This document shows positions 10,487 to 64,000 of a DNA stretch of 64,000 bases, in pieces. A model generated the notes under the pieces. That model had not been told where the DNA came from. It ran no database searches and saw only the letters and a program-made list of their open reading frames with translations. The translations under genes and the position numbers were made by a program. The stretch is from assembly GCA_030390025.1 (NCBI GenBank), contig CM059449.1:35588001-35652000 (forward strand), read 5' to 3'. Origin of the DNA: Squalus acanthias. Lineage: Eukaryota. Position 1 is the stretch's first letter. Each line of letters starts with the position of its first letter.

Positions 10487-10556
10487 ATGGGACGTCCAAT
10501 ACTTGCACAGATAGAAGAAATTTACTACCCTATTCTCGCGCTGCTTGGTGCTCCTG
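10487..10556 (+). pseudogene. GPR139-like class A GPCR pseudogene A, exon 1 (MGRPILAQIEEIYYPILALLGAP)
   Basis: ATG at 10487, 70 nt, phase-1 donor CTG|GTAAGT. Same length and highly similar to the exon at 61732-61801. Confidence 0.9.
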
Positions 10557-13500
10557 GTAAGTCACTATTCTCAATTACTGGTTATCTTTGCCAGTGTTTA
10601 ACTGTCCTACTGCTCTTTCTTCCTATGTGATAATGGCATCTGATCATTCTGATCTATTCTCTGTATAGCTACTTTTAATGGTATCAGTTAGATGACAAAC
10701 GTGCTTTCAAGTTCCCACATATTGTTTTAAATGAATCAGATCAGAGAAAATACGACTTGCTCTGATCTTTCAAAATCAGCATTCCTACCGATTTTATTCC
10801 ATTGCAATTTTGTGCTGAATAGTCCTCTGGTTGGCAGGTTGAAGGGAGGCAAGACTGGCGCCCGCCCACTGCACTGCCAACACTAACCTGCTGAAGCTTC
10901 CTCCTGGAGTCCTCATTGGTGATACAATGTTTATTGTGTTAACGCAGCTCCTTACTGGCTCCCCGCTATTAGGAGCGAGCGACATTTAGTGTTGATGCAA
11001 TTTTTAAAAGGTTGAAGCTAATTAAAGAGGGATATCACTTTTGGAGCTGCAGGAAGCACAACTGCCCGAGTGCCTTGAAGGGGCCGGAGGCTCAGGGCTG
11101 GGGGTCAACAGCAGGAAGGCGCTCAGATTGTCAGATGTATCTGTGAAGCTGTTGCTACTTGAAGCCATTGCGAGAAGAGATTTGAAGGGTTTTCTCCTTC
11201 CACTGGCGGGTTTGCGGTGTGGTGGTCCGAACGCTACTAGGGACATTTTAACTTTGGGCGATACTGTAAAATGATTGATATCGGAGGGGCCACCCATTCT
11301 ACATCTCCCCCAATTCCCCTTTGCATTGACTTGGATTTTGTCTGCAGGAGGTTGTAGAAAAATTCCTTTGTGATGCTTCACTGCAAGAGAGTCCAAACTG
11401 GCCTGTTCTATCTCCTCCTCATAACATGGGAATACTGAGATTCCCATTGGGAAATGCATGTGCCCAGTCAATACTGTACATTCTGCAGAGCTGTCTAAAA
11501 GGAGCACAAAAACTCCAGACAGAACCTCCAGAGAACCAAACAGTTAAAATCAACAGGCAGGCAAAGTAACAGCAAACCTCAGCACTAGCAAACATAATGG
11601 CATGCTCAATGTGGAGTGGCCTCAGGGAACCAGTCTGCAGGTAATATCACCCTTATATAGTGCTGGTGACAAATGGGATCGCGTTTGGGGCAAATGTTGC
11701 GGACAATGGGAGTCCTGTTGACTTTGGGTTATAATGTAAAATGTGTGATATCGAATTTTCCGCTAATTATAGGTCCTCCCTATTTCCAATCCATCGACTT
11801 CAATGGAAATTGAATTTGGGCCTGGCCTATAATGGGCAGTGAATCACATATCGCTCATTTTACGCTGAGCCCCAAAGTTAAAGTTACCTCCCAATTCAAG
11901 AGTTTTTCATCCCCGCTTTCCCCTATTTAAAGATAATCAAATGCCTTACAGGAGGTAGTAGAGGCGGGGACCATCACTGCTCCATTTTACCGAGTTTTTA
12001 GCACAAACATGACCCTAATTCAGAATAAAATCCAGCCTCCTGGGGTTAGTTTATCTTTGGCCTCAGAGAAATGAAGCTCCGGGAGGAGTGTATAAAGGGC
12101 GGCCCATCCGATATCATTACTTTTACACGAGCGCCGAATGTCAAACCCGACCCCTTGTGTCCAGACCGAGTGTTAGAATCCCACCGGGAACAGATCATGC
12201 CGAGCTCGCAATTTTTATAATTTTCAGGTTGGATGAGAAACAACAATTTGCCTATGACTCCCCGGTACTAACCACTGTGGATCATTGCACTGCAGCAAAC
12301 TCGGAAGGTGTATATCTGTGGAATGTGCTCCCTGGGCAGCGCCGATGCAGCGCCAGCAATCCGTGTCCCATCACTAGTTCTTTTACCAATCGCCCCAGGT
12401 TGTTTTTAGATTTGGCAGCAACATTGCAAGTGAACTAACTGTTGTAAATTGATTAAAGCGTTTATACAGGTCATTCCTGAATTCCCACCTTTCTACTAAT
12501 TAGAATGTACTATATTTCATGGAGTACAAATCTGGTCTGGTACATTTCATGGATCCCGCTGCCGAGGTGTGGAGCGCTCTGACTCTCGGGCTTTGTGTAG
12601 ATGCCCTACAATCCAGTTTGAAATATTTTGATATCACTTTAGGCCAGAACAACGACTCACTCAGAAACTTAACTTATGGGCGTCAACACCAGGATAACAC
12701 CTTGCTGGATCTTTGAATATGTTTGCTTACAAGACAGGACTGAATATTACGTGGTGATTAATATTATTACACTATTACACATTACAATGCAAAATCACGA
12801 AGGTTATTTGCAAAAAAAGGAAAATAAAGATCTGTAAGTCCGATTTATAGTATCTTTGATGTAATCTGTAAACAAGACATCGAATCTGTACGGGTGGTGT
12901 TATGAAGTATGTGTGTTCACTGATTTGTATCTAAAGTTGTTGTGTGCAAATAAATGCCAAATGATTGACTTAAGTTTTAGAAGTTACCGATTTCCAAAAG
13001 TTATTGGGGCAGATTTTGTGTTGGCTATGACAGCGTACTCTGACAGTATGCCATCACACCGCCTTTAAAATATACCACAAGGTCAGTATTTCCGCATGCA
13101 CTTGCACTAAATCCAGAATTTGCCATCTGTCAAGGTGCGCAACATACGGCCCGATATATGTGTGTACATATTGTCGATCGAGTTTCATTTTAATTACTTG
13201 GAAAGTTGGATAAGAAACTTAAATAAAGCGAACACCTATCAGATTTCAGTAACGAATATGTCCTTTTCGCTCAAACATGAACAACATAACAAGCAATATA
13301 ATGCAATATTAACAAGAACATAAATTTAACTATTACCAGTCTAAATGAGGTCTGAATAATATATTTTAAGCCTGAAAGTTAACATTGAATATATGGCTGG
13401 TAATCTCTATCTGAAATTCAGCAACATTACTTGTACCAGTGATAGATTGTTACTGAGTATCACAGCAGGAAGTTGTATAAATATCGACTAAAAATTTTTG

Positions 13501-14007
13501 AGTTTAGATGAAAAATAAAACAAAATGCTGATATATGAAACAAGTCCAAGTTTTTAGAAGTTTTTAAAATGTAATTTCAATAGAAGAGACGGAAAGCAGT
13601 TTCTGTGGGCGTGGCTTAGTTTGGGCAGCTTTTGTGGGCGTGTCTTCTCTTACGCACAGGCTGTCCGCTGCTCTCCTGCCCTTTGTGATGTCATTCGCTG
13701 CGCACAGCTCTGCAGCGCCGAAAGCATGTCTCCGTTCTGGGCCTTGCACAAGGTAAGATTGTACTCCGAGCTACACCGCCGATCGTAATTTTTGGGCCAG
13801 TATTTTACTTCGAGGCAACTCAGGAAAATAAGGATGTGCCGTGCATGGATAAATAGTTAGTCATCCTCAGGATTACCACGTCTAGGTGGCACAGAGAGTG
13901 ATTGATTTGAGTGAAGGAAAAATCAGCATTAATTAGTACACTTTTTTTGTTCCAATTACGTGTGATGTCCATAATCGTGATTTATTTACCCACTCTCGCA
14001 CTTGCAG

Positions 14008-14897
14008 CCAACTTGGTCAAAATTGTGATTCTCTTCCGGGGAAAACGCGGCCACTCCATGTAAATCACTATTTACCTGGTGGCCATGGCATTGGCCGATC
14101 TGCTGGTCCTGATATTTGGCGGGGTCCTGTATGAGATGAAAGCAATTTATTTCCCGGATTCATTCCTGGACTACACTCCGGTCTGCAGTCAGAATGTCTT
14201 CCTTATTTATGCTTCTATTGAATGTTCTGTCTGATTAACTGTCGCTTTCACCTTTGATCGATTTGTCGCCATTTGTTGCCAAAAAATAAGAACTCAATAT
14301 TGCACCGAAAAAACTGCGGCAGTGGTTGTAGCAACGATATCGGGGCTGAGCATTTTTGAAAATTTCCCAATGTACTTTATTTTAGTACCTCGCGCAATAA
14401 TTGACAATATACCGTAGTTCTGTGAACTGAACTCAAAACTCTATACTGTACATATAAGGGTTATATTCTTATGGCTTGACATAGTTTAAATCCCTTTTAT
14501 TCCTTTTCTTTTGTTTTTGATATTCAATGGTCTGACCATCAGGCAATTTCTACTGAAAAGTAGAATCAGGAGGGATCTCCGGAGAATCGACAGTGACCCA
14601 GAAATGAACAACCGCAGGAAATCCATCGTTTTACTGCTGGCCATATCTGGCAGTTTTATCCTGTTATAGATGGTAAGTTTAATTCATTATATATCTGTAC
14701 AAATTATGGATATTCAATACTTGCACACAGACTGCAGTAATCCGTTCAACATTTTGGAACAAACTGGATATATGCTGCAGAATATGAGTCCTTGCACAAA
14801 TACCATCATTTATGCAGTGTCCCAGACTAAATTCAGAGTGGAGTTAAAGAATCTGATTCAATATCCCTTGTCTGTAATTACTAAGTTAGGGAAATAA
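14008..14897 (+). pseudogene. GPR139-like class A GPCR pseudogene A, exon 2 (TM1-TM7)
   Basis: Acceptor TTGCAG|CC. Translation includes ANLVKIVIL..YLVAMALADLLVL..LTVAFTFDRFVAICC..YCTEKTA..DPEMNNRRKSIVLLLAISGSF..CTNTIIYAVSQTKFR. In-frame stops at 14061, 14232, 14415, 14487 and 14667; no frameshift. Confidence 0.92.
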
Positions 14898-16803: not shown

Positions 16804-17206
16804 TCTGATTAACGATGATTATTTCAGCGTGTTCTTGGATCCAAAGCAATTCTCGCCTTTGACCCTCTCAGGTTCTGGGTAAACACCTTTGAAATCTAGG
16901 GAGTGAAATCCAAATGTTAGACAATCCCGAGATGATGGTGCAGAGCACAGTACAGAGAATGAAGTGACTTGTTCATTCTCTTTACATGGTCCTTCCCCTT
17001 CACTGTAGCTCAGTGGCAGTTCGTTTAGTGCACAGGAGCAGCGGGACTAAAGAGTGGTCGATTCTCACTGCTTTCGCCCGGCGTTAACGGGGCGGTAATG
17101 GCTTCCAAATGGGGTCGGTAGCCTTATCTTCCCGGTAACGTTGTGCAGGTTCCAATCAGTTCCACAGGCGATGGAACCGGAGAGATTTGCTTGCACTCCG
17201 GACTGC

Positions 17207-21108: not shown

Positions 21109-21232
21109 TTTCTTTCTTTATAACAGATATTTACAATTCAAATATAATCCTGGGGCAGGCCAAAGGATTTTCTGCAAAGCCGCTGTGTCATACTTTTACA
21201 AACAGGGGTGTAACATTATACCCTCGCCTTAC

Positions 21233-21338
21233 CTCTGTTTTTTCCTCCACATATAGATTAAAACTATAACGATAGCCAGCGACACCAGTACACACACGAC
21301 AATCAGCCCCACATGCTTGACTTTCTCTACTTTTCCTT
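21233..21338 (-). CDS. MHC class I-like heavy chain, connecting peptide/TM exon (EGKVEKVKHVGLIVVCVLVSLAIVIVLIYMWRKKQR)
   Basis: Acceptor TTTTTCAG|AA is phase-compatible with alpha3. A hydrophobic stretch of about 22 residues is followed by RKK stop-transfer residues, then donor GAG|GTAAGG (read-through gives AGG TAA). Absent from the ORF track because it is short. Confidence 0.85.
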
Positions 21339-22244: not shown

Positions 22245-23390
22245 AATAGACAGATAGAAATCGCGAGATAGATAGATAGAGNNNNNNNNNNNNNNNNNNN
22301 NNNNNNNNNNNNNNNNNNNNNNNNNNNNNNNNNNNNNNNNNNNNNNNNNNNNNNNNNNNNNNNNNNNNNNNNNNNNNNNNNNNNNNNNNNNNNNNNNNNN
22401 NNNNNNNNNNNNNNNNNNNNNNNNNNNNNNNNNNNNNNNNNNNNNNNNNNNNNNNNNNNNNNNNNNNNNNNNNNNNNNNNNNNNNNNNNNNNNNNNNNNN
22501 NNNNNNNNNNNNNNNNNNNNNNNNNNNNNNNNNNNNNNNNNNNNNNNNNNNNNNNNNNNNNNNNNNNNNNNNNNNNNNNNNNNNNNNNNNNNNNNNNNNN
22601 NNNNNNNNNNNNNNNNNNNNNNNNNNNNNNNNNNNNNNNNNNNNNNNNNNNNNNNNNNNNNNNNNNNNNNNNNNNNNNNNNNNNNNNNNNNNNNNNNNNN
22701 NNNNNNNNNNNNNNNNNNNNNNNNNNNNNNNNNNNNNNNNNNNNNNNNNNNNNNNNNNNNNNNNNNNNNNNNNNNNNNNNNNNNNNNNNNNNNNNNNNNN
22801 NNNNNNNNNNNNNNNNNNNNNNNNNNNNNNNNNNNNNNNNNNNNNNNNNNNNNNNNNNNNNNNNNNNNNNNNNNNNNNNNNNNNNNNNNNNNNNNNNNNN
22901 NNNNNNNNNNNNNNNNNNNNNNNNNNNNNNNNNNNNNNNNNNNNNNNNNNNNNNNNNNNNNNNNNNNNNNNNNNNNNNNNNNNNNNNNNNNNNNNNNNNN
23001 NNNNNNNNNNNNNNNNNNNNNNNNNNNNNNNNNNNNNNNNNNNNNNNNNNNNNNNNNNNNNNNNNNNNNNNNNNNNNNCAGAGATATACAGACAGAGAGA
23101 CAGACAGAGAGAGACAGTCAGACNNNNNNNNNNNNNNNNNNNNNNNNNNNNNNNNNNNNNNNNNNNNNNNNNNNNNNNNNNNNNNNNNNNNNNNNNNNNN
23201 NNNNNNNNNNNNNNNNNNNNNNNNNNNNNNNNNNNNNNNNNNNNNNNNNNNNNNNNNNNNNNNNNNNNNNNNNNNNNNNNNNNNNNNNNNNNNNNNNNNN
23301 NNNNNNNTGGGACGGAGAGAGAGAGAGAGAGAGAGAGACATAGTTAGAGAGACAAGGAGACAGATAGAGAGAAAGACAGACAGACAGATC
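22245..23390. other. (GATA/GACA/GA)n microsatellite region with assembly gaps 22282-23078 and 23124-23307
   Basis: N runs flanked by GATA/GACA/GA repeats, inside MHC intron 4. Confidence 0.95.
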
Positions 23391-24966: not shown

Positions 24967-25233
24967 CCCAGGAGACTGTTTTCCCACCCGGCAAGCTGCT
25001 GTGCTCAATATGACAGGAGTATTGTTTCCCATCATACGGATCAAATTCAAGGGTTGTCGTTAGTTGATACGTCCCATCGTGATTGGGTAATAGCCCAGTA
25101 GATTTGGTCTCAGGGGCATGTTCTCCATTCTTCAACCAGGTCACGCTGATGGACTGTGGATAAAATCCAGTCACAATGCAGTGGAGAAACCAACGATCAG
25201 CAGCCCTGGCAATAACTGAGACCTCAGGGGAAA
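24967..25233 (-). CDS. MHC class I-like heavy chain, alpha3 (Ig C1) exon
   Basis: 267 nt, phase 1-1, TAG|TT ... G|GTAAGG. Translation VSPEVSVIAR..LHCIVTGFYPQSISVTWLKNG..LLPNHDGTYQL..YSCHIEHSSL..VSW. Confidence 0.97.
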
Positions 25234-25461
25234 CTACATGATAGAACGACAGTTATTTTCAACTTCAATAAAAGTCACACATTTCAAAACAGAATGAATG
25301 AAGTCATTTTAACTTTTGCCACTAATGTAAAACAGGTGATATCGGATCAGCCGCCTGTTAAAGGAGAATGGGGAGAGGTTCATAACGGAAGCTGATCCAA
25401 TATCGCCAGTTCTACACTATCTCCAAAATTTAAATTTACCCCCAGTTTGTTCTGAACTTAC

Positions 25462-25737
25462 CTTGTCTGGTTAGTGAAGCATTTCCAATTGAATAGTATA
25501 TCCTCCATACATCCACACAGTCATTTTCTAATAAGCTCTTGAAATAAAGATTCATCTTTGTTTCCTTATCCCATTTCACTTTGAAGGTCTGAGCTATTGG
25601 ATCATGTACGGTCCAATCCAATTTGTCTTTATCGAAACTAAATGAGTATCTTCCATCATAAGCGAATTTCAACACCCCTACACTAGGATTGGCATCATTC
25701 AGCTCACAGCCAAACAGTCCTTGAATGTAGTGAATAC
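25462..25737 (-). CDS. MHC class I-like heavy chain, alpha2 exon
   Basis: 276 nt (canonical size), TTCTAG|GT ... AAG|GTAAGT. Translation SIHYIQGLFGCEL..FAYDG..KVKWD..LLENDCVDVWRIYYSIG, with the C101/C164 pair. Confidence 0.97.
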
Positions 25738-26659
25738 CTAGAACAGTAATTGAATCGATCAATAGCTACATAATTATCTCATCTATACACCAAATCTCAG
25801 AATTTCAGTTATTCTTTAGTTACTCTTTCCATTACTATGTGTAGAAATGGAATTTAGTGTCTAAAACAAGGTTCATCACACAGGGACATAGAATTTACAG
25901 CACAGAAAGAGAACAATTGGCACCAAAGGTAAACGGCAGCTGCCTGCTGTAATATTCCTGCTATATTAGGTGTTCAGACCTGCATGAAAAACCCCAACAG
26001 TGTCCTAACCAATGTCTTCTGTAAGTCAATATCAAGTCCCTGATGTTATACTCAATGACCCATTGAGCAAAATACAGACGAGGTGAAATTGGTCTTCTCC
26101 AGTAGTGCGAAATGGACTCATAGCGAATCAGCACTCGTTTTACACTCCACCCATTGTTCTTCTAATAACTTCAAAGATATAAAATGGGCTGTCAATTCAC
26201 CATGGCCCCAATGGAAGGGAAGATTGGGCGGAGTGTGTAATGGGTGGCCGATCCAATATCACTCATTTTACACTGTCACCAAAAGTTAAAATTACCCCTC
26301 ACATATGCAACACCACAGGACATTGAGTAGAAAATTTAAAACTCTTACATCTGTGTGTAATTCCTGTCCACAAAAGCATACTTCCTGTTGTCATATTTCT
26401 ACTACATTTGTGTTAACAATTCCCTTTATAAAATCCTATGTCCACCTTAAAAAGGAAGCTGCCACCGTCGGCTGGTCATGCTGTAATTACACCCTCCCAC
26501 CGGTGGTGGCACTGTCGGACTTAGCTTTGCATTTCCCAGAGAAACTGCGGTGCACCAACCAATTCTACTTCACTGCTTCCCAAATTGAATAAATGTTGGT
26601 ATTTAACTATAAATCTAGCTATATTTTATTAGAAATGTTATGTACTACCTGTCCACACA

Positions 26660-32584: not shown

Positions 32585-32845
32585 TTGATGTTTGATTGTT
32601 CTGCTGCAACCATCTATCAACCGGTCCCTTGATGAGTCCGTGGAAACCAGCTAGAGTGCTTGTGTATTCGTCCCAGTAGCTTTTGTCAAATGCTTCCGCC
32701 ATCCATTGCTGTCTTGGAACAGTTATTTTCATATTTTTGTCGTAATAGTCTATCTCACAGCCATCCAAAAGCCTCATAACACTGTACTCCGGCAGATCAG
32801 CAATCCCATGGTTCAGGGTGTAGTAATATAACAGAGAGTGAGACT
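32585..32845 (-). CDS. MHC class I-like heavy chain, alpha1 exon
   Basis: 261 nt, phase 1-1, TCCTAG|AG ... CAA|GTGAGT. Translation ESHSLLYYYT..LPEYS..LDGCEIDYYD..PRQQWM..YWDEYT..NQTS, with the N86 glycosylation sequon. Confidence 0.96.
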
Positions 32846-35503: not shown

Positions 35504-38500
35504 TGCTGGGTGATAGAAAGTTTACAAGCTACACAATCTGAAAATTCAACACTCCTCCGTTTCAGTGGCGGTGTAAGCCTATCTGCTTTGAACAGATTGA
35601 GGCTCTGCTAAAATAGTGGAAAGAGGAATTTCAGACCAAGATACAAATACACTTGTTCATTGAGCCTTATTACTCGCTGTACCGCCATACATGTTCTGCC
35701 TAAAATTACTGTTGGCAATATTACTGAGACATGTTACTGTCCATTGCTGTAACACAGGTGATATCACACTTGTTTTAAGCAGGCTACACCATTAAAATAA
35801 CAGGCAAAGTAATGTTACACCAATATGGTAAGCGTTTCACCTCTAATATCACCAACATTAATTTAGGAACAGGAGGAGGCCATTCATCCCCTCGAGACTT
35901 TTACTGCCATTCAATTAGGTCATGGCTGATCTGTATTTTAACTCCATCCAATCATGGAATAATATAGCACAGAAGGAGGCCATTCGGCCCATTGTGCCTG
36001 TGTCGGCTCTTTGGTATAACGAGCCAATCAGTCCCATTCACCTGCTCTTTCTCCATAGCCCTGTATTTTTGTTTTCCCTTTAATTATTTGTCCAATTCCA
36101 TTTTCAAAGTTTCTGTTAAATCGGCTTCCACCTGATGTCCTGAGCTGGTGAAAGGCGCTGTAGAAAGGCAAGTCTTTCTTTCTCTCTTTCTTCCGCAGCA
36201 GCTGTAACAGGTGCCGAAAGCTGCCTCTGATGTTCACCCCGAACAGCTCCAGGCTGTGAGCAGCAGGCACTGATCAATTCCAACAGTCAGTGGGCTCGAT
36301 CTTGACTTTGTACGATAGTAAAACGGGCGATAGCCAGTCGGCAGCCCCTTTTACAGCTCTCCAGATTTTTACTGCCATTGAACTCAATAGAAGGGGGAAA
36401 CGGAGAGAAAGATGGAAAACTGGCGGCCGACTCGCTCTCGCCCTCGTTACACCATCGCACAGAGTCAACATGAGCCCGAATGGAACCGCACATGGTGGGA
36501 ATCCGCTACAAACTGCAAATGTTGCAAATATGCAGCAGGTCAGTGTGAAAGAGACAGAGAGGTTAACTCTGGGAGCTCAATCTTCACCCGAACCTGCACG
36601 GAACGCCTCAAAGCTTCATTCTAAAGCGAGTCGGAAAGTGTAAAAGAGGTTCCCGGGTCGCTGGAACCCGTTTCCCCCTGTGATAAAAGTGAACCCCTCC
36701 CTCTGTATTTTTAATGATTTGTCCGATTTATTGGGAGGTTTAAAAGGTTTTCCAAGTTCCCAGGAGGTAGAAAGAAGCTTTTAAAATGCAGCTTCCCGCC
36801 GGCTGGAGTTACACTGAAACAGGTGTGAACCCAAACCGACTGAGCCGCTTTCCTACAGGAGTCTCGCCGCTGGGAACTGGGTCACTCAGGGGGTCAAGTC
36901 GGGACTGGGCTCGCAGTTATACTGACACTTCCGTACCCGCAAGCCGCTTAGCGGGAACAAACTGTCCGTCCCCCTCCTGCTTATCAGAGCGAACATACAA
37001 GCTGTCACAGTAACTGAGCGGTAATGTCAGGCTGTCCGGACAGTAATGGACATCATCTAATCCAAGCAAAGGGATCAGCGAGCCTGAGAAGCAGATGGAG
37101 ATTCCAATCCCGCTTCATCGCTTCACTTCCGCACACACTGACTAGTTTCCCTGTGTGAAACACCTGATGTGACCGACAGGCCTGCCGGTTACAGTCTAAG
37201 ATCAGAGGGTGAGCCTGGAGACATTCAAGGATGCATCCGAACCGGCTACTCACCAGACAGGGCCGCTTGTAGGCGGAAGAAACTCAGTACAAGTGACAGA
37301 AACATGCCGTCCCTTCCGTCCGCCAACCTGCCGTCTCTCCCAGTGACAGAACAAGATTGAGCGATTTGAATGGAACCGAGCCCAGCTTCACTCACAAGTG
37401 GGCAGTCGGGAGCTCACCATCCAATCGCAGTAAAGATCCGTCACTGATTGTCCAGGGCTGTCCCTGAACGAACCGTGAGCAGCACCGAAACTGACTCACA
37501 GTCCAAGGCCTGCGCCATGTGGCCATGGACAATACACGGCGGGCGGTTAGAAATATGTTTAAAACAGCGCTCCGGGGGTTAAGTTGTATAATTGATAACA
37601 ATTAATATATTGTCTGAATCTAGCGGGAAACGCCCTCGTTGCCGCAGAGAGTCGAGTGATAAACTATTCAGCTTGTTGAACCTCAATACAGTGAACCACC
37701 GAAGTTCATATCACGGCAATTAAACCCTTCCTGACCCCGTGGGGCTATTTTAACCTAACCCGCCCGGCCGAACAACTGCCGGGATCGGGGGCAACACTGG
37801 TTTTACCCCGCGCCCAATTTTATTCTCCATTGAAATCAGTGGAGAGTAATATTGTGCGGGAGCGGGAAAGCAGCGTTCCACCCGCCCCGTGGGATCCCGC
37901 CCAGCCACTCAGGTTCAAATTGCCCCAAACTGCGGCTGTCATTGCAGCAGCGGCGTGTGGGCTAATATTTCATTTTTTTTTCATTCCGGCTTACTTTACA
38001 CTTGAACTGACATTACTTTGTGCTTCTGAGCTGTCAAACCAAACTGTAAAATATAAAGTCAAAGTACTGAGTAAAAATAAGGACCGAATGTCCTGACTTT
38101 CAAATGGGAACTGAATTATTCTAGGAAAAACACCCAATGCTCCACCCATCTCAATTATTACAATTCCTAAATTACCCTAAATCTTCTTATGTAACTATGA
38201 GTTATATAAAACCAAAGGTTTCTATCAGTAAGGAGAGAAGGCAGGAATTATAGATAGATGGAGATGAATGATGTCTGGGCGCCTTGGTCCAGTTTTCCCC
38301 AAGCCTCGAACCCACCTCACTGGAATAATACACTCGGTGCTAGATGTTTAATAGAAGGGAATTCAGGCGGGTTCTGCAAATGATGTGGGAGCCTCTCCAT
38401 CTGGTTTTACTCTGTGCTCCGCCAGGCGAGGCTTAATATCCAGGCGGTAAAGATGGGAATCTGCCCCATGGTCATCACCTTGTGAGCAATGTCAACAGCG

Positions 38501-43280: not shown

Positions 43281-43540
43281 TTGAACTGAGGTTCATCTGT
43301 TGTAACGTTCTGGAAACTTGCCCTTTCTGACTCCGTGGAAACTGGCTAGAGTAATTGTGAGTTCCTCACAGTAACTGGTGTCACAGAAAGTCACCATCCA
43401 CTGATTCCTTGGAACCGTTATGCACATATTGCTGTCACAATAGTCTATCTCACAGCCATCCACAATCTCCATTTTACTATAGTCCGGAAGATGAGAACTC
43501 CCATGGTTCACTGTGTAGTGATGCATCAAAGAGTGAGAAT
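43281..43540 (-). pseudogene. Orphan MHC class I-like alpha1 exon with a 1-nt deletion
   Basis: TTCTAG|AT ... CAA|GTAAGT, 260 nt versus 261 nt in the paralog. Translation DSHSLMHHYTVNHG..DGCEIDY..ITVPRNQWM..LASFHG. Restoring one base near 43321 gives QVSRTLQQMNLSS, colinear with PVDRWLQQNNQTS. Confidence 0.88.
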
Positions 43541-43686: not shown

Positions 43687-43855
43687 NNNNNNNNNNNNNN
43701 NNNNNNNNNNNNNNNNNNNNNNNNNNNNNNNNNNNNNNNNNNNNNNNNNNNNNNNNNNNNNNNNNNNNNNNNNNNNNNNNNNNNNNNNNNNNNNNNNNNN
43801 NNNNNNNNNNNNNNNNNNNNNNNNNNNNNNNNNNNNNNNNNNNNNNNNNNNNNNN
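43687..43855. other. Assembly gap
   Basis: Run of N. Confidence 1.
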
Positions 43856-54329: not shown

Positions 54330-56966
54330 GTCATAGTATCATAGAATGGTTACAGCACGGAAGATGGCCATTCGGCCCGTCGAGCCCGTGCCGACTCTCA
54401 GCTAGTCCCACTCCCCTGCCCTTTCCCCGTAGCCCTGCATTGTTTCCTTCAGATACTTATCCAACTCACTTTTGAAAGATAAAATTGAGTCTGCCTCCAC
54501 CACCCTTTCAGGGAGTGCATTCCAGATTTTAACCACTCGCTGCGTAAATAAGCTCTTTCTTCCATCGACTTTGGTTCTTTTGCCAATCACCTTAAATCTG
54601 TGTCCTTTGGTTCTCGACCCTTCTGCCAATGGGAACAGTTTCTCTCTATCTACACTGTCCAGGTCCCTCATGATTTTGAACACCTCTATCAAATCTCCTC
54701 TTAAACTTCTCTGCTCCAAGGAGAACAACCCCAGCTTCTCCAGTCTATCAACGTAACTGAAGTCCCTCATTCCTAGTATATTTTCTGCCTTTTTAACTGC
54801 TTTCTCAACCTGCCCTGCCACCTTCAACGATTTATGCACACAGCCCCGCAGGTCTCTCTGTTTGTACACCACCTTTAGGATTGTACCATTTAGTTTATAT
54901 GTCCTCTCCTCATTCTTTCTAACAAAATGCATCACTTCACACTTTTCTGCGTTAACTTTCATCTGCCACATATCCACCCACTCCACCAGCCTGTCTATAT
55001 CATCCTGAAGTCTATCACTCTCCTCGTCACTGTTCACTGTACTTCCAAGTTTTGTATCAAATGCAAATTTTGAAATTGTGCCCTGCACACCCACGTCCAA
55101 GTCATTAATATATATCAAAAAAAGCAGTGGTCTTAGAATCGACCCCTGGGGAACACCACTGTATACCTTCCACCAGTCCGATAAACAACCGTTCACCACT
55201 ACTCTCTGTTTCCTGTCACTTTGCCAATTTCTTATCCATGCTGCCGCTGTCCCTTTCAGTCCATGGGCTTCAATTTTGCTGGCAAGCCTATTTCGTTGCA
55301 TTTTGTAGAACGCCTTTTGGAAATCCATGTACATTAGGTCAACCACATTACCCTCATCAACCATCTCTGTTACCTCAGCAAAAAACTCGATCAAGTTGGT
55401 TAAATACGATTTGCCTTTAACAAATCCGTGCTGGCTTTCCTTAATTAATCCACCCCTATACAAGTGATTTGATTTTGTCCCTGATTTCTGTTTCTGAAAG
55501 CCTCCACACTACCGCGGTTAAATTGACAGGCCTCTCGTTGCTGGGTTTAACTTTACACCCTTTTTTGAACAATGGTGTAATATTTGCAATTCTCCTGTCC
55601 TCTTGCACCACCCCCGTATCTATGGAGGATTGGAATATTATGACCAGTACCTCTGCGATTTCCACCCTGAATTTCTTCAGCATCCTAGGATGCACCCCAT
55701 CTGCTCCTGGTGATTTATCTACTTTAAGTACAGCCATCCTTTATAATACCTCTTCTTTATCAATTTTCATCCTATCAAGTGTCTCTACTACCTCCTCCTT
55801 CACAATGTCTATGGCAGCATCCTCTTCCTTGGTAAAGACAGATGCAAAGTAATCATTTAGTACCTCAGCCATGCCCTCTGCCTCCATGTGTAGGTCTCCT
55901 TTTTGGTCCCTAATACCTTACTATTTCTTACTTCGGTGCTCTCTGCCTCTCCCCATCCTTTGATCACTTTATTTCCGCTTTCTAATGTTACATCCCGGTG
56001 CCCATCTCGCTGCCAAATTAGTTTAACCCCCCCCCCCACCCCAACAGCACTAGCAAATCTCCCCGCAAGGATGCTGGTCCCGGCCTTGTGGAGGTGCAAC
56101 ACGTCTGGCCTGCACAGGTCCCACCTCCCACAGAACCGGTCCCAATGCCCCAGGAATCTGAAGCCCTCCCTTATGCACCAACTCTCCAGCCACACATTCA
56201 TCTGCTCTATCCTCCTATGTGTATACTCACTCGCACCTGGCACCAGGAGTAATCCGGAGATTACTACCTTTGAGGTCCTGCTTTTTAATCTCTTTCCCAG
56301 CTTCCTAAAATCTACCTGTTGGACCTCATCCCTCTTTCTACCCATGTCGTTGGTACCAATATGGACCACGACCTCTGGCTGTTCATCCTCCCCCCTCAGA
56401 ATGTTCTGCAGCCGCTCAGTGGCATTTTAACCCTAGCACCAGGGAGGCAACACAAAATCCTAGAGTCACGTCTGCGGCCGCAGAAACGCCTGTCTGCTCC
56501 TCTAACTATCGAATCCCCTGCCACTATTGCTCTCCCACTCTTCTTCCGCACCCTCTGTACAGCTGAGCCACCCGTGGTGCCGCGGACATGGCTCTGGCTG
56601 TACTACCCAGAGGAACCAATGCCCTCACCAGTACTCTGAACAGAATACTGGTTGGAGAGCGAGATGCACTCAGGGGACTCCTACACTACCTGTCCTGGTC
56701 CTGCTTTTCGCTCTGGCGGTCACCCAATACTCCTTAGCTGCGGAATGACGACCTCCTGAAATGTGCTATCCAAGTAGTTCTCAGCCTCGTGGATGCACCG
56801 GAGTGACGCCAGCTGCTGTTCAAGGTCCGAAACCCGGAGCTCGAGCTCCTCCAGCTGACGGCAACTTCTGCACACGTGGTTGTCCAGGACACAGGAAACG
56901 TCCTGGATTGCCCACATGGCACTGGATGTGCACTCTGTGGGACTGAGCTGCCCTGCCATGCCTCCA
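54330..56966 (-). mobile_element. CR1 LINE with ORF1 (zinc finger/leucine zipper plus esterase) and RT; endonuclease region deleted
   Basis: 56720-56959 CRSCRQLEELELRVSDLEQQLASL; 55857-56369 VHIGTNDMG; 55456-55737 KSPGADGVHPRMLK; 54402-55463 RT motifs. ORF1 joins the RT-upstream region directly at about 55920-55960. Confidence 0.92.
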
Positions 56967-58073: not shown

Positions 58074-60750
58074 TTTTTTATTCGGTTACGGGATGTGGGC
58101 GGCGTTGGCAAGGCCAGCATTTGTTGCCCATCCCTAAATGCCCTTGAGAAGGTGGTGGTGAGCCGCCTTCTTGAACCGCTGCAGTCCGCGTGGTGAAGGT
58201 ACTCCTACAGTGCTATTAGGTAGGGAAGGTTTTCCAGGATTTTGACCCAGCGACGATGAAGGATCGGCGATATACTTCTAAGTCAAGATGGTGTGTTTCT
58301 TGGAGCAGAACTTGGAGTTGGTGGTCTTCCCATGTGCCTGCTGCCCTTGTCCTGCATTTGGGAGGTGCTGCCGAAGAAGTCTTGGCGAGTTGCTGCAATG
58401 CATCTTGTAGATGGTACACACTGCAGCCACGGTACGCCAGTGAATGTTTAAGGTGGTGGATGGGGTGCCAATCAAGCGGGCTGCTTTGTCCTGGATGGTG
58501 TCGAGCTTCTTGAGTGTTGGTGGAGCTGTACTCATCCAGGCAAGTGGAGAGTATTCCATCACACTTCTTACTTTTGCCTTGTAGATGGAGGAAAGGCTTT
58601 GGGGAGTCATGAGGTGAGACACTCGCTGCAGAATACCTAGCCTCTGACCTGCTCTTCTTGTCACAGTATTTATGTGGCTTGTCCAGTTAAGTTGCTGGTC
58701 AATGGTGACCCCCAGGATGTTGATGGTGAGGGATTCGGCGATGGTAATGCCATTGAATGTCAAGGGGCTGTGGTTCGACTCTCGCTTGTTGGAGATAGTC
58801 ATTGCCTGGCACTTCTGTGGCGCGAATGTTACCTGCCACATATCAGCCCAAGCTTGAACGTCGTCCAGGTCTTGTTGCATGCGGGCATGGAATGCTTCAT
58901 TATCTGAGGAGTTGTGAATGGTGCTGAACACGGTGCAGTCATCAGCGTACATCTCCATTTCTGACATTATGTTGGAGGGTAGGTAATTGATGAAGCAGCT
59001 GAAGATGGTTGGGCCTAGGACACTGCCCGGCGGAACTCCTGCAGCGATGTCCTGAGGCTGTGATGATTGACCTTCCACCACGATCTTCCTTTGTGGTAGA
59101 TATGACTCTAGCCAATGGAGAGATTTCCCCCCGATTCCCATTGACTTCAGTTTTACACGGGCACCTTCCTGCCACACTCGGAGAAATGCTGCTTTGATGT
59201 CAAGGGCAGTCACTCTCACCTCACCTCTGGAATTCAACACCTTTATCCATATTTGGACCAAGGCTGTAATGAGGTCGGGAGCCGAGAAGTCTTGGCGGAA
59301 ACGAATAAGGCATCAGTGAGCAGGTTATTGCCGATGAGACTTTCCATCACTTTGCTGATGATTAAAAGTAGACTGATCGTATGGTAATTGGCCGGATTGG
59401 GTTTGCCCTGCTTTTTGTGGACAGGACATGCCTGGGCATTTTCCACATTGTCGGATAGATGCCAGTGTTGTAGCTGTACTGGAACAGCTTGGCTAGAGGC
59501 TCGGCTAGTTCTGGAGCACAAGTGTTCAGTACCATAGGCGGGATGTTGTCGGGGCCCATAGCCTTTGCCGTATCCAGTGCGCTCAGTTATTTCTTGATAT
59601 CACGTGGAGTGAATCGAATTAGCTGAAGACTGGCTTCTGTGATGATGGGGACCTCAGGAGTAGGCCGATATGGATCAGCCACTCGGCACTTCTGGCTGAA
59701 GATGGTTGCAAACGCTTCAAACTTGACTTTTGCACTCACGTCCTGGACTCCACCATTATTGAGGATGGGAATATTCTTGGGACCTCCTCCCCCGTTAGTT
59801 GCTTAATGATCCACCACCATTCATGACTGGATGTGGCAGGACTGCAGAGCTTTAATCTGATCCGTTGATTGTGGGATCGCTTAGCCCTGTCTATAGCATG
59901 CTGCTTCCGCTTTTTAACATGCTTGTAGTCCTAGTTGAAGCTTCCCCAGGTTGGCCCCTCCTTTTTAGGTACGCCTGGTGCTGCTCCTGGCATGCTCTTC
60001 TACATTCCTTACTGAACCAGGGGTTGGTCCCCTGGCTTGATGGTAATGGTAGAGTGAGAGATTTGCCAGGCCATGAGGTTACAGATTGTGGTGGAATACA
60101 TTTGTGCTGCTGCTGATGGCCCACAGCACCTCATGGATGGCCAGTTTTGAACTGCTAGATCTGTTCTAAATATATCCCATTTATCACGGTGGTAGTGCCA
60201 CACATGGAGGGTGTTCACAGTGAGAAGACGGGACTTCGTCTCCACAATGACTGTGCGGTGGTCACTGCTATCAATACTGTCATGGACAGATGCATCTGCG
60301 ACAGGTAGATTGGTGAGGACGAGATCAAGTAGGTTTTTCCCTCGTGTTGGTTCTCTCACCACCTGTCGCAGGCCCAGACTGGCAGCTATATCCTTCAGGA
60401 ATCTGCCAGCTCGGTCAGTAGTGGTGCTACCGAGCCACTCTTAGTGATGGACATTGAAGTCCCCACCAATAGTATATTCTGTGCCGTTGCTACTCTCAGT
60501 GCTTCTTCCAAGTGGTGTTCAGCATGGGGGAGTACTGATTCATCAGCTGTGGGAGGGCGGTAGGTGGAAATCAGCAGGATGTTTCCTTGCCCATGCTTGA
60601 CCTGAAACCATGAGACTTCATTGGGTCTGGAGTCAATGTTGAGGAATCCCAGGGTCACTCCTTCCCGACTGTATACCACTGGGCCGCCACCCCTGGTGGG
60701 TCTGTCCTGCCGGTGGGACTGGACATACCCAGGGATGGTGATGGAGGAGT
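58074..60750 (-). mobile_element. CR1/L2-group LINE ORF2 (APE endonuclease plus RT), decayed
   Basis: LISTYRPP, PTRGKNLLDLVLTN, MGPDNIP, ALDIKAAF, GSVLGP, YADD, KCQAMTI, with the 3' tail at 58074-58150. Confidence 0.9.
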
Positions 60751-61540
60751 TTGATGGGATGCCAGAAAATGTGGAATGAAAGCTTTACAATAAGGCAATG
60801 CAGAGACAGTGGGCATCATTCAAACAGCGGAATATTAATCTACAGCCTAGACATATTCCCACAAGTAAAGGTAGCTCACCAAAAGCTGGAATTCCTAGAA
60901 TGAGAATTGAAATAAAAATTAAGATGAGAGTTAAAAAAGCAAGTGACATTTCGAATGTAAAAGGAAATCAAACTGAAAAAAAACAGACCGGAAAAGAAAA
61001 GATTCGAACTGGTAATAAGAAGTCTGAAGGAAGACTGGCAGGTAAATAGTAAAGGTTCTTAGGAACAGATTAAAAAAACAAAATAATAGTTAAATAAAGG
61101 GAAGGATTCATTAAATGAGCAAGGAAATAATCTTCTAGAGGAAGAAAGAATGTTAGAGATATAACAGAAACCAATATTCAGCCCCAATTTTCACCAAGGA
61201 ATGCGATAGAGGGAGTGAAAGGATATAAGAGGAGGACATGGGTCGATTAGATTGGTCGTGTGACAGCTTCTGGAACCAGAAAACAGGACAATATTGAGCA
61301 AATCCTGAAAGTTGTGGGCTAGTTAAGGAGAAGAAAAATCAATCTGTAAAAAGCAAGCGCTGTCAGCCAAATTTATAGTTATTTGAGGAAAAGCAAGAGG
61401 CACATTTACTTTGACAGTCCTGTGTGTATTAATGAGTTATCACCTCTGTGAAGTTAGTGCACACAGGAATGTAGGGCAAATAGGTTAAAGTTCATCAGAG
61501 AGTGTCTCCGATCAGGAGTTCCACCCTTCTAATAGTCAAG

Positions 61541-61680
61541 AATCATTGTAGTAAAAGCAGCTGCCTGATCTGTTTGTTTAAAAGACCGTAAGTAATGTCA
61601 GTTATTGTGTAACCTAATTGTCTCACTTGAGATTTCTCTGAGATATAAATAAAGGATTGGATTGAAGCGGCTTCATCTTC
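61541..61680 (+). promoter_or_regulatory. Proximal promoter of GPCR gene B (TAATTG, O/E-like site, TATA)
   Basis: TAATTG 61615-61620; TCTCTGAGA 61635-61643 (reverse complement TCTCAGAGA fits YYYCARRRR); TATAAAT 61644-61650. Alignable with promoter A. Confidence 0.62.
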
Positions 61681-61731
61681 TTGTCAAACTGAGCTGTTGC
61701 CTCCAGCACCGGCTTCGTGTGACTCAAAGAG

Positions 61732-61801
61732 ATGGATCGACCAATCCTTGCCCAGATTGAAGCGGTTTACTACCCGATTCTCGCAGTGTTTGGTGTTCCT
61801 G
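61732..61801 (+). CDS. GPR139-like class A GPCR gene B, exon 1 (MDRPILAQIEAVYYPILAVFGVP)
   Basis: GAGATGG Kozak context, 70 nt, phase-1 donor CTG|GTAAGT. The YY...G.P|AN junction in TM1 is typical of GPR139/142-type genes. Confidence 0.92.
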
Positions 61802-62454
61802 GTAAGTCATTACCATCAGTTGTCAATGTCACTCGGGGTTTACCTGTATCACTGCTCTAGTTGATTCTGTGAGCTGTTTGTTTTCACGGGCTTGTTTGTA
61901 CTGAGATCAATTAAATGTCACCACTTCTACTGAAACCTTAACGCAATAACGTCACAGAAATTCACAGGGAAGTTACAATTGTCTCTGCAGTTTCAGCACC
62001 AACAATTTTAACAACTTTCACCACAGTCTCGCAGTACTGGGGGTGGAATAGGTCTTCGGCAGCAGCTCGAGACCGGCTCATAGCGAATCCGAACCTGTTT
62101 CACTCCGCGCACAATTTTTTCCCATTGAAATAAAAAGTAAAGTATTTCGGGCACGGTCTGAATGTGCTGCCAATTCACTATCGTCAGTTTTGCGCTACCG
62201 TCCGATACAAATTTCACCCACAGAGTCAGAACAGAAGAAACTGGCAGGGAGAGAGAGAGAGAGAGAGAAATAGAGAGCGACAGAGTCAGAAATATAAAAA
62301 TAGTTTAAAGAAAAGAGAGAGAAAAGGAAAGTCAGAGAGACAGAGGGTAAACTGAACTCTGCTCGCCAGGTGTAAAACCGGGGCTCGCGAGCTGACAGCT
62401 TGTTTGAAAACTCGCTGGATTATTTTTCCATTTACTTCAAAGGACTTTGGTTTT

Positions 62455-62785
62455 GCTCCTGGACTAAGAATCCAGAGACATGGACCAATGTTCTAAAAAT
62501 CGTGAGTTCAAATCCACCATGGCTGATCGAGAATGTGTGAATTCAGTTAAAAAATACCTGGAAATAAAAATAAATGGAGCATTCATAAATTGACCAGGTA
62601 TCATAAAGAGCCAACTGATTCACTAATATCCTTTAGAGAAGGAACCTGCCGTCCTTACCCGTCTGGCCTATACATGACTCCAGTCCGTCACCCACTGCCC
62701 TCTGAAGTGGTCTAGCAAGTTACTGAGGGCAACTAGGGATGGGCAATAAATGCCAGCGATGCCCACAGCCCGGGAATCAATTAAA
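62455..62785 (+). mobile_element. tRNA-derived SINE with LINE-derived tail, in the intron of GPCR B
   Basis: B-box GAGTTCAAATCC; the tail AGGGCAACTAGGGATGGGCAATAAATGCC matches the LINE tails at 51155-51210 and 58090-58145. Confidence 0.75.
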
Positions 62786-63480
62786 GTATACACAGTAAAG
62801 GTAACTGTGCTTGACCCATTGATTTACTGTTTTCTCCCTATTGCCACGTCTCGCGGTCTGCCAACTTATGCCTGAACCTCGGGCTTCCTTTCTTTACATA
62901 GTTGCCTGTTTCTTCTTAGTCCACTATTCCTTCACCTTGGCCAAGATGGATAACGGGTTGAGATGCCTTCTGAGACTCTCCAAAGAATCTCAGAATCCCT
63001 CACCCCTCTTCTGACACCCCCTTTTAATGTTCCCATCCCTTGTATTTGAATTCTAGCCCTTTGCCTTCTCCCAAACCCGTCCCAATTTGCAGCTCAAGCT
63101 GTGCTAGTGAGTAGACCTGGGTGTTAAGAGCGCACTTCAGGTTAATGCTGTACATTAAACCCTCCCTCATAGCCATTCTGGCCTAAAATACCCTGATAGA
63201 AAACTCCCAGCTAAAGAGAAACAGAGACAGAGAGAGATGATTAGAGCGTCACAGAAACAAACTGAGACATAGAGAGAGAGGCAGGAGAAAGGCAGATTGT
63301 GAGTAAAACTGAGGGATGGTCAGAATCAGTGACAGATATAGAAATACAGAGAGAGTCAGAGAGAGAGAGCATGAGTTGAGCAGTAGAAAATATGTGCTGA
63401 AATTTGATAAACTGTCATTACCTGCCGGCCATTTTGTTTTGACTATGATGATTAATTAATTTTTTCCTCTTTTATTGCAG

Positions 63481-64000
63481 CGAATTTATTCACAATTGTG
63501 ATTCTCTCCCGTGGAAAGTGCGGTCTCGCCACATGCATCACTCGATACCTGGTGGCCATGGCAGCAGCAGATCTACTGGTCCTGATATTTGATGTAATTC
63601 TGTATCAGATTAAAGAGATTTATTTCCCAAATTCATTCCTGGACTATACTCTCATCTGCTGTCTCAATCTCAGCCTGGCATTTTCTGCCACTGATTGTTC
63701 TGTCTGGTTAACCGTCGCCTTCACCTTTGATCGATTCATCGCCATTTCTTACCCGAAACTGAGAGTCAAATATTGCACCGAAAAAACTGCGACTGTGATT
63801 ATAACAACGGTGTGTGGTTTGAGCCTTTTACAAAACATTCCATTTTACTTTGTAAGTGAAGCTGGTGAAATAATTGATAACATACAATGGTTCTGTGCTG
63901 TAAAATCTACCTTCTACACCTTTCCCATTTGGATGGCTTATCTCTGGCTCCAAATTATTTTAACCCCACTCGCTCCATTCGTGTTCATTGTACTGCTCAA
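63481..64000 (+). CDS. GPR139-like class A GPCR gene B, exon 2 (partial; runs off the window)
   Basis: Acceptor TTTTATTGCAG|CG, then an open frame ANLFTIVILSRGKCGLATCITRYLVAMAAADLLVL..CSVWLTVAFTFDRFIAI..YCTEKTA..NIPFYF..WFC..LTPLAPFVFIVLL with no stops. Missed by the ORF track because there is no stop inside the window. Confidence 0.93.

What the first reader, a model, noticed from the sequence alone, without database searches (positions are those of the whole stretch)
10487..64000. Nonclassical MHC class I genes nested inside a GPR139-like receptor cluster: candidate MHC-Ib/chemoreceptor system
Seen: an intact divergent class I gene and a second class I remnant sit on the minus strand between two paralogous GPCR genes on the plus strand. 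I found no classical MHC neighbours (TAP, PSMB8/9, tapasin) in these 64 kb, and both families show duplication plus pseudogenisation. Established: mammalian GPR139/GPR142 respond to aromatic amino acids, and mouse H2-Mv (M1/M10) class Ib genes are co-expressed with V2R vomeronasal receptors. Inference: this may be an expanded amino-acid or peptide-sensing GPCR array physically coupled to a class Ib gene, either co-regulated or co-duplicated, that could act as an escort or ligand carrier.
Basis: partly seen in the sequence, partly recalled or inferred. Interest (0 to 1): 0.85.

Follow-up and report, generated by a model that had tools for sequence, protein, structure and literature searches.

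The report
Shark MHC-like gene among orphan receptors
A shark immune gene of the lipid-presenter type (class I lineage "UGA") lies inside a large family of orphan GPR139-like receptor genes, and the same neighbourhood recurs in skates and other sharks, but nothing yet shows that the two gene types work together.

Summary
On the minus strand lies a transcribed, correctly spliced class I gene: leader 37254-37305, a1 32585-32845, a2 25462-25737, a3 24967-25233, TM 21233-21338. There is also a lone broken a1 exon (43281-43540). On the plus strand are two GPR139-like genes. One is a pseudogene with five in-frame stops (14008-14897). The other is cut by the window end (61732-64000).

The class I gene is not an unassigned lineage. 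Each ectodomain exon matches PDB 9CH4, "shark nonclassical MHC class I, UGA", at E about 1e-42. A review calls UGA CD1-like and lipid-binding.

The adjacency is not species-specific:
- Little-skate gene models run the UGA ortholog into a GPR139-like gene.
- In sevengill shark, accession order places UGA between two such receptors on one 530-kb contig.
- In Rhinoraja, near-identical copies of both families alternate in accession order.
- In 10 of 13 species both families sit on contigs of equal length.

First-stage notes report the same interleaving at five other places in this genome.

Receptors next to UGA fall in different subfamilies, so there is no fixed gene pair. Escort, ligand-carrier or chemosensory roles remain untested. 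The closest known analogue is the MHC-linked olfactory-receptor cluster.

The parts
10487..10556 (+). GPCR1 exon 1 (ATG, 23 codons plus 1 base, gt donor at 10557)
   Evidence: 71% identical to GPCR2 exon 1 over 31 aa
14008..14897 (+). GPCR1 exon 2. GPR139-like pseudogene with premature stops at 14061, 14232, 14415, 14487 and 14667; native stop at 14895
   Evidence: 73% identical to Heterodontus P0270
16868..16895 (-). Candidate last coding exon of class I gene A (unverified)
   Evidence: tblastn with the last 22 aa of Pristiophorus P0002: E 0.001, 50% over 16827-16892. An ag acceptor sits at 16897-16896
21212..21229 (-). Out-of-frame relic resembling the family's Tyr-x-x-hydrophobic tail, 3 bases after the TM exon
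   Evidence: family tails in alignment A2
21233..21338 (-). Class I gene A, connecting-peptide and transmembrane exon
   Evidence: 82% identical to P0002 over 33 aa; RNA loose end after a3 matches 21309-21338 with 2 mismatches
22282..23307 (.). Two assembly gaps (22282-23078, 23124-23307) inside the a3-TM intron
24967..25233 (-). Class I gene A, a3 (C1-set Ig) exon
25462..25737 (-). Class I gene A, a2 exon
32585..32845 (-). Class I gene A, a1 exon
   Evidence: RNA loose end at 25737 matches its last 30 bases with 1 mismatch
37254..37305 (-). Class I gene A, leader exon (coding part)
   Evidence: matches the leader of P0002; RNA loose end matches 37255-37283 with 1 mismatch
43281..43540 (-). 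Lone a1 pseudo-exon (class I remnant B). 260 bases, in-frame TGA at 43293-43295
43687..43855 (.). Assembly gap 147 bases upstream of remnant B
61732..61801 (+). GPCR2 exon 1
63481..64000 (+). GPCR2 exon 2, open to the window end (TM1 to about TM5)
   Evidence: 81% identical to Pristiophorus P0272

Best explanation
The window is a piece of an elasmobranch class Ib region on the MHC chromosome. A gene of the UGA lineage sits inside a large tandem array of two-exon, GPR139-like orphan class A receptors. UGA is a nonclassical class I lineage reported to be CD1-like and lipid-binding. The two families are neighbours because they share a region prone to duplication, where blocks holding both gene types are copied and then decay. 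Here that decay left one working-looking UGA gene, one a1 relic, one dead receptor and one apparently live receptor.

Shown: the gene structures, splicing of the class I gene, lineage assignment, and recurrence of the neighbourhood in other species.

Inferred: the duplication mechanism; that UGA here acts as an antigen or lipid presenter as in other sharks; and that the receptors signal independently of it.
For: Lineage. The a1, a2 and a3 exons each hit 9CH4_A at E 5e-42, 2e-42 and 1e-41; 64 of 86 a1 residues are identical. The entry title names UGA. The lineage has 1-3 listed proteins per species in sharks and rays: 18 hits at E<=1e-30.

Transcription. Exon-only coverage and a GT..AG joint in X1 and X3.

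Receptor family. 1284 hits at E<=1e-20; the best 120 that carry a name are all from elasmobranchs. GPR139 is the only PDB receptor below E 1e-6 for member P0272.

Linkage.
- Skate LOC129716032 isoforms join the UGA ortholog to a receptor.
- Heptranchias accession order on one 529,794-base contig is receptor ..247, UGA ..249/250, receptor ..252.
- In Rhinoraja, 10 UGA-like proteins and 6 receptors, each set within clusters of at least 90% identity, alternate between XP_078272016 and ..232.
- Contig lengths are equal for both families in 10 of 13 species with data.
- 22 of 22 Heterodontus, 13 of 14 Rhinoraja and 5 of 5 Stegostoma receptors among the best 120 lie on the UGA contig.

No fixed pair. 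GPCR1, GPCR2, the skate neighbour and the Heptranchias neighbours fall in four different supported clades.
Against:
- Skate read-through models and the Rhinoraja co-amplification could also reflect selection to keep the two genes together.
- Tissue of expression is unknown because run names are coded.
- The RNA-derived TM sequence differs from the window's TM exon at 2 of 30 bases, while the same contig's a3 part has 0 of 94 differences. The true TM exon could therefore lie in a gap.
- The tree used only the 120 best hits to one skate receptor, plus 8 cluster members and the 2 window copies, and FastTree support only.
Confidence: 0.68

Rival explanations
1. Functional module. UGA-type class Ib genes and neighbouring GPR139-like receptors are co-regulated and act together. 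For example, the class I molecule escorts the receptor or hands it a lipid or metabolite ligand, as H2-Mv molecules do for V2R receptors in mouse.
For: - The neighbourhood is kept across sharks and batoids.
- Both families appear co-amplified in Rhinoraja.
- Skate gene models imply transcripts that run from the class I gene into the receptor.
- The receptors have almost no extracellular N-terminus, which suits small ligands.
Against: - No expression data exist for the receptors.
- Receptors next to UGA are not orthologous between species.
- In this window the nearest receptor is dead and lies tail to tail with the class I gene.
- An in-frame class I-receptor fusion would place the receptor's first helix the wrong way round (inference), so the skate fusion proteins are unlikely to work.
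- UGA already has a plausible role of its own as a lipid binder.
Confidence: 0.12
2. MHC-linked chemoreceptor array. The GPR139-like family is a sensory (olfactory or taste-like) repertoire that happens to be MHC-linked, like MHC-linked olfactory receptor genes of mammals and birds. The class I genes are bystanders.
For: - Family size is large, with many old subfamilies and pseudogenes.
- The genes have a simple two-exon plan.
- Upstream blocks with TAAT-type and TATA-like motifs are shared by the two paralogs.
- MHC-linked OR clusters are a known arrangement (PMC11800647, PMC4988538; search listing and start of abstracts only).
Against: - No tissue data.
- No paper on such a family in sharks was found.
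- An earlier first-stage note also places family members beside T-cell receptor V genes (s1-889751, unchecked), which points to immune loci rather than sensory ones.
Confidence: 0.15
3. Artefact or chance. The adjacency comes from mis-joins at the N gaps, or from a receptor family so dispersed that any gene has one nearby.
For: Three gaps lie within the finding. The family is very large.
Against: - The class I TM exon and GPCR1 lie 6.3 kb apart with no gap between them.
- Order and orientation across the gaps fit the spliced RNA.
- The family is concentrated on the UGA chromosome, not dispersed: 22 of 22 in Heterodontus.
- The same neighbourhood is seen in independent assemblies.
Confidence: 0.05

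Closest known systems
Shark nonclassical MHC class I UGA (PDB 9CH4, released 2026-03-18). With UFA, described as CD1-like in PMC12562908.
   Same: All three ectodomain exons match at E about 1e-42. The exon plan, both domain disulphide cysteine pairs and the TM segment are conserved with orthologs. The lineage is low-copy and found in sharks and rays.
   Different: It comes from a different species: 64 of 86 a1 residues are identical. The family's Tyr-x-x-hydrophobic tail is not in frame after the TM exon here. Lipid binding was not tested.
MHC-linked olfactory receptor clusters of mammals and birds, including co-duplication of OR and H2-M class I genes in mouse (the mouse case is recalled, not read here)
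   Same: A large tandem array of class A receptor genes lies on the MHC chromosome, interleaved with nonclassical class I genes. There are signs of joint duplication and many pseudogenes.
   Different: The receptor family differs (nearest GPR139, not OR). The class I partner is of a CD1-like lineage. The animals are elasmobranchs. I found no paper describing it.
Mouse H2-Mv (M1/M10) with V2R vomeronasal receptors (recalled)
   Same: A nonclassical class I family is linked in some way with a chemoreceptor-like GPCR family.
   Different: That system is defined by co-expression and a protein complex, neither of which was tested here. V2Rs are class C receptors with large ectodomains, whereas these are class A with almost none.
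Human GPR139 (PDB 7VUG)
   Same: It is the best and only PDB GPCR match below E 1e-6 for a full-length family member. The first-helix motif around the exon 1/2 junction is shared (alignment).
   Different: The match is only 43-57 bits. The family has over a thousand members in elasmobranchs. In the third-helix motif, Phe or Leu stands where the aligned human GPR139 has Tyr. The seventh helix reads N-T-x-I-Y; that the usual motif has Pro there is recalled. It is a paralogous expansion, not an ortholog.

Membership tests
MHC class I, UGA lineage | a1/a2 MHC fold domains | tested here: met
   a2: PF00129 E 1.1e-14, above cut-off. a1: no Pfam hit alone, but phmmer hits class I chains (6LUP 5.5e-12)
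MHC class I, UGA lineage | Membrane-proximal C1-set Ig domain | tested here: met
   PF07654 E 2e-20
MHC class I, UGA lineage | One domain per exon, phase-1 introns, spliced in that order | tested here: met
   joint and loose ends
MHC class I, UGA lineage | Closest to the named UGA protein rather than to other class I lineages | tested here: met
   9CH4 scores 144-147 bits per exon. The next best chain scores 49-59 bits for a1 and a2 and 102.5 bits for a3. Entry title
MHC class I, UGA lineage | Complete reading frame through to the cytoplasmic tail | tested here: inconclusive
   The frame is open from leader to TM. After the TM exon there is either an immediate TAA or a gt donor. The candidate last exon at 16868-16895 is unverified
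MHC class I, UGA lineage | Binds lipid; pairs with beta2-microglobulin | not testable with these tools
   Known only from a review's personal communication
GPR139/GPR142 group of class A GPCRs | Rhodopsin-type 7TM domain | tested here: met
   PF00001 E 2.2e-11, 44.2 bits, cut-off 30.5
GPR139/GPR142 group of class A GPCRs | Orthology to GPR139 | tested here: not met
   43-57 bits to human GPR139. There are tens of paralogs per species. It is a GPR139-like expansion, not GPR139 itself
GPR139/GPR142 group of class A GPCRs | Activation by aromatic amino acids | not testable with these tools
   No assay was possible
MHC-linked receptor array with co-duplicated class I genes | Receptor array and class I genes interleaved on the MHC chromosome | tested here: met
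   This window. The MHC class III region on the same piece, 22 Mb away, is known only from an unchecked note
MHC-linked receptor array with co-duplicated class I genes | Joint duplication of class I plus receptor units | tested here: inconclusive
   Rhinoraja accession pattern fits it. The tree of this window's receptors speaks against it here. No coordinates or paired trees were available
Class Ib escort of chemoreceptors (H2-Mv/V2R type) | Co-expression in the same cells and dependence of receptor surface expression on the class Ib molecule | not testable with these tools
   The one reads call went to the class I gene. Run tissues are coded

The most novel reading that the evidence does not exclude
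UGA-type (CD1-like) class Ib genes and GPR139-like receptors form an ancient functional unit of elasmobranchs. The unit has been kept together since before sharks and rays split, is copied as a unit (Rhinoraja) and is transcribed together (skate read-through models). In it the receptors sense lipids or small metabolites related to what UGA binds, or need UGA to reach the cell surface. That would be a second, independent case of MHC class Ib and GPCR partnership, at the base of jawed vertebrates.
Probability: 0.1. Interest if true: 0.9.

Novelty: new variant of a known kind. Interest (0 to 1): 0.6.

Why it matters
The class I gene itself is a new member of a lineage that specialists already know. 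What appears not to be in print is that this lineage lives inside a very large, elasmobranch-wide array of GPR139-like orphan receptors on the MHC chromosome, and is amplified with it.

If coordinates confirm it, linkage between the MHC and a receptor array would not be a peculiarity of tetrapod olfactory receptor genes. It would recur, or be ancestral, in jawed vertebrates. That gives a concrete system for asking whether such linkage has a function. It would also mark an orphan receptor family of more than a thousand members as worth de-orphanising.

Tried and rejected
- A leader exon at about 34.4-34.5 kb. Rejected because the real leader at 37254-37305 matches the Pristiophorus leader and an RNA loose end.
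- A tail exon at about 18.79 kb with a Tyr-x-x-Ile motif. Rejected because it lies in the conserved 3' end of a LINE, and the pattern search gave 16 chance candidates.
- Skate receptor P0151 as ortholog of GPCR2. Its 63% identity equals the family median of 64%, and the tree puts the two in different clades.
- Reads laid across the a3-TM gaps: not possible.
I used cluster-member accessions instead.
- The primary papers on shark class Ib lineages (PMC7002201, PMC8454915) are not held.
- No paper for 9CH4 or UGA beyond a review's personal communication.
- Supplements of PMC10751288 may list genes flanking the class Ib clusters. They were closed and I did not open them.
- The protein atlas search added nothing beyond family names.
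- The AlphaFold model of P0002 was only moderate (pLDDT 64.4). I used it only to retrieve the title of 9CH4, not to judge the groove.
- I made no joined (spliced) protein of the window's class I or receptor genes. Exons were searched one at a time. Full-length searches, the fold and the alignments used natural database proteins (P0002, P0151, P0272, alignment A2).


Full report
WHAT IS IN THE WINDOW

The window has three runs of N: 22282-23078, 23124-23307 and 43687-43855.

On the minus strand there is a class I gene whose domain exons are all open and bordered by canonical ag/gt sites in phase 1. These are a1 32585-32845, a2 25462-25737 and a3 24967-25233.
- Pfam recognises a2 as MHC_I (E 1.1e-14) and a3 as C1-set (E 2e-20).
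- a1 alone has no Pfam hit, but it matches class I chains in the PDB.

The leader is at 37254-37305. It matches the leader of the Pristiophorus protein P0002. My first candidate near 34.4 kb was wrong.

The connecting-peptide and TM exon is at 21233-21338. It is 82% identical to the same part of P0002 over 33 residues.

The end of the gene is not settled.
- Directly after the TM exon comes either a TAA (if unspliced) or a gt donor.
- Three bases further on, out of frame, lies a relic of the family's Tyr-x-x-hydrophobic tail.
- A piece at 16827-16892 resembles the last 22 residues of P0002 (E 0.001) and has an acceptor in front of it. I list it only as a candidate last exon.

I never joined the exons into one protein. 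Every search with window sequence was done exon by exon.

A second class I piece is a single a1 exon at 43281-43540.
- It is 59% identical to the first a1.
- It is one base shorter and has an in-frame TGA twelve bases before its donor.
- It is about equally distant (50-61%) from every UGA-type protein on hand.
- No a2 or a3 goes with it.

On the plus strand are two receptor genes that share a two-exon plan. Exon 1 encodes 23 residues and splits the first helix.
- GPCR1 (10487-10556 and 14008-14897) has five premature stops, at positions where its closest relative has Cys, Trp, Trp, Leu and Trp. It has no frameshift.
- GPCR2 (61732-61801 and 63481 onward) is open up to the window end.

The rest is mostly transposon debris. 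Of 30 other ORFs, 4 hit reverse transcriptase, 3 have sub-threshold hits and 23 have none. I saw no TAP, proteasome or tapasin domain, though an ORF scan can miss short exons.

THE GAPS

The first two gaps lie in the intron between a3 and the TM exon. The third lies upstream of the a1 relic.

On the gap-free part 23308-26300:
- Three putative RNA runs of one organism (X1-X3) cover only the a3 and a2 exons. A fourth run (X18) covers all 30 bins, as DNA would.
- X1 (2 contigs) and X3 (1 contig) show the joint 25233->25462, which is GT..AG on the minus strand.
- Loose ends at 25737 continue into the last 30 bases of a1, with 1 mismatch.
- Loose ends at 24967 continue into a sequence that matches 21309-21338 with 2 mismatches.
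- One contig joins the leader (37255-37283, 1 mismatch) directly to a2, skipping a1.

So the order and orientation leader-a1-a2-a3-TM in the assembly agree with the transcripts.

The two mismatches in the TM part stand beside 0 of 94 differences in the a3 part of the same contig. This leaves open that the true TM exon lies in a gap, or that the contig mixes paralogs. Other contigs are only about 93% alike, so related copies are expressed too. That the runs are RNA is the tool's guess, supported by the exon-only pattern. Tissues are coded.

Whatever the gaps hide, the TM exon and GPCR1 lie on one gap-free block, 6.3 kb apart.

WHAT THE CLASS I GENE IS

Each ectodomain exon hits one PDB chain far above all others. 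That chain is 9CH4_A, at 145, 147 and 144 bits. The next best chain scores 49-59 bits for a1 and a2 and 102.5 bits for a3. In a1, 64 of 86 residues are identical.

The entry title, obtained through a fold search with a model of the natural relative P0002, is "Crystal structure of shark nonclassical MHC class I, UGA", released 2026-03-18.

[quoted passage not shown] It cites a personal communication (PMC12562908, passages read).

[quoted passage not shown] Its main text does not mention GPCR, GPR139 or olfactory genes (PMC10751288, passages read; supplements not seen).

A search with P0002 found 18 proteins at E<=1e-30, from 13 species of sharks and batoids. Most orthologs end in a Tyr-x-x-Val/Ile tail. 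From memory, this is the kind of endosomal sorting signal that CD1 tails carry.

WHAT THE RECEPTORS ARE

GPCR2 hits 7tm_1 (E 2.2e-11). Its best PDB match is human GPR139, but at only 43 bits.

The full-length relative P0272 matches GPR139 at 57 bits, and no other PDB receptor falls below E 1e-6.

A search with the skate member P0151 gave 1284 proteins at E<=1e-20. The best 120 that carry a name are all from elasmobranchs, and most are named "probable G-protein coupled receptor 139".

So this is a large expansion related to GPR139, not GPR139 itself. What is known of mammalian GPR139 ligands cannot be transferred.

IS THE NEIGHBOURHOOD CONSERVED?

- Little skate. NCBI isoforms of one locus (LOC129716032; 663, 657, 576 and 574 aa) run from the UGA ortholog's TM region, through 18 linker residues, into exon 1 and exon 2 of a GPR139-like receptor. 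A 398-aa isoform ends in receptor exon 1. The two genes must therefore be adjacent on one strand.
- Heptranchias. On one contig of 529,794 bases, the accession order is receptor XP_067834247, UGA ..249/..250, receptor ..252.
- Rhinoraja. Ten UGA-like proteins in one cluster of at least 90% identity carry the accessions XP_078272016, 021, 044, 051, 153, 184, 208, 227, 232 and 545/546. They alternate with six receptors from two such clusters (..154, 177, 180, 191, 202, 217), all on one 41.5-Mb contig. This looks like recent joint amplification.
- Contig lengths. The contig length recorded for the UGA ortholog equals that of listed receptors in 10 of 13 species with data. The ten are Heterodontus, Heptranchias, Chiloscyllium punctatum, Stegostoma, Mustelus, Rhinoraja, Pristis, Leucoraja, Hemitrygon and Rhincodon. 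It does not in Cetorhinus, Scyliorhinus torazame or Mobula birostris, where no receptor of that assembly was listed.
- Concentration on the UGA contig. Among the best 120 receptors, 22 of 22 from Heterodontus, 13 of 14 from Rhinoraja and 5 of 5 from Stegostoma lie on the UGA contig.
- This genome. First-stage notes report class I genes interleaved with GPR139-like genes at five other places, four of them on this piece between 2.24 Mb before and 0.63 Mb after the window. They also report an MHC class III region 22 Mb away on the same piece. These notes are unchecked leads.

Accession order is only a proxy for gene order.

IS IT A FIXED PAIR, OR CO-DUPLICATED HERE?

In a FastTree tree of 130 receptor rows:
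- GPCR2 sits in a 12-row clade (support 97) with Pristiophorus, Pristis, Heterodontus, Rhincodon and Chiloscyllium members.
- GPCR1 sits in a 5-row clade (support 100) with Heterodontus, Chiloscyllium and Scyliorhinus members.
- The skate neighbour and the two Heptranchias neighbours fall in two further clades.
- GPCR1 and GPCR2 join only in a clade of 123 rows.

The receptors beside UGA are therefore not one orthologous line, and the two in this window are old paralogs. The data fit a class I gene embedded in an array, with occasional block duplication, better than a co-evolving pair.

Limits: the rows were chosen as best hits to one skate protein, GPCR2 is a fragment, and GPCR1 was read with X at its stops.

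HOW IT MOST LIKELY WORKS

Shown: structure, splicing, lineage, family size and recurrence of the neighbourhood.

Inferred:
- UGA here is a surface, beta2-microglobulin-associated lipid binder like its crystallised relative.
- The receptors signal on their own.
- The linkage reflects shared residence in a duplication-prone part of the MHC chromosome, as with MHC-linked olfactory receptor genes of mammals and birds (PMC11800647 and PMC4988538, seen only as search listing and start of abstract).
- The co-duplication of OR and H2-M genes in mouse is recalled, not read.
- An in-frame fusion of a type I membrane protein to a 7TM receptor would invert the receptor in the membrane. The skate fusion proteins are therefore probably not functional, even if the read-through RNA is real.

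VERDICT

- Physical coupling is conserved, and in skates probably involves co-duplication.
- The "unassigned lineage" and "amino-acid sensor" parts fail.
- The escort idea is untested.

I found no paper on a GPR139-like expansion in sharks or on its linkage to class Ib genes. The primary UGA paper, if there is one, is not in the library and might mention it.

Noticed in passing
window 14008-14897: The GPCR1 pseudogene has five nonsense codons but not one frameshift over 296 codons. Three of the five replace Trp codons (TGG to TGA or TAG). That ratio of stops to indels seems high for plain neutral decay.
   Followed up: partly
window 10230-10486 and 61476-61731: The two receptor paralogs are only 56% identical as proteins, yet they share upstream blocks about 60-200 bases before the ATG, with TAAT-type motifs and a TATA-like box. 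This bears on the separate note s1-889244. I saw no conserved O/E-type site.
   Followed up: partly
window 25737 and 37255-37283: One contig of run X2 joins the leader directly to a2, skipping a1. The skate isoform X3 (P0155) has the same in-frame a1-less architecture.
   Followed up: partly
window 21212-21229: An out-of-frame remnant of the family's Tyr-x-x-hydrophobic tail lies three bases after the TM exon. In this gene the presumed endosomal sorting signal may be lost. The two Pristiophorus models (P0001, P0002) also lack it in frame.
   Followed up: partly
window 24967-25737 (runs X1-X3): Besides contigs identical to the window, there are contigs about 93% alike over the same exons. At least one more UGA-like copy or allele is expressed in that organism.
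   Followed up: no
proteins P0152, P0153, P0155, P0180, P0003 (Leucoraja LOC129716032): NCBI models fuse a class I heavy chain in frame to a 7TM receptor through the receptor's 5' leader. This is either a real read-through transcript or a modelling artefact.
   Followed up: partly
proteins P0174, P0315-P0323 and P0181, P0182, P0324-P0328 (Rhinoraja longicauda): The UGA-like lineage, described as single or low copy, has at least ten near-identical proteins in this skate, alternating in accession order with near-identical receptors. Several of those receptor models carry unrelated N-terminal extensions.
   Followed up: partly
window 4276-6140: Minus-strand ORFs with a weak GIY-YIG match lie next to unassigned ORFs. 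This may be a Penelope-like element. LINE fragments with reverse transcriptase lie at 19368-19760, 48359-48676, 54402-55463 and 58278-59261, with a GDSL-like ORF at 55857-56369.
   Followed up: no
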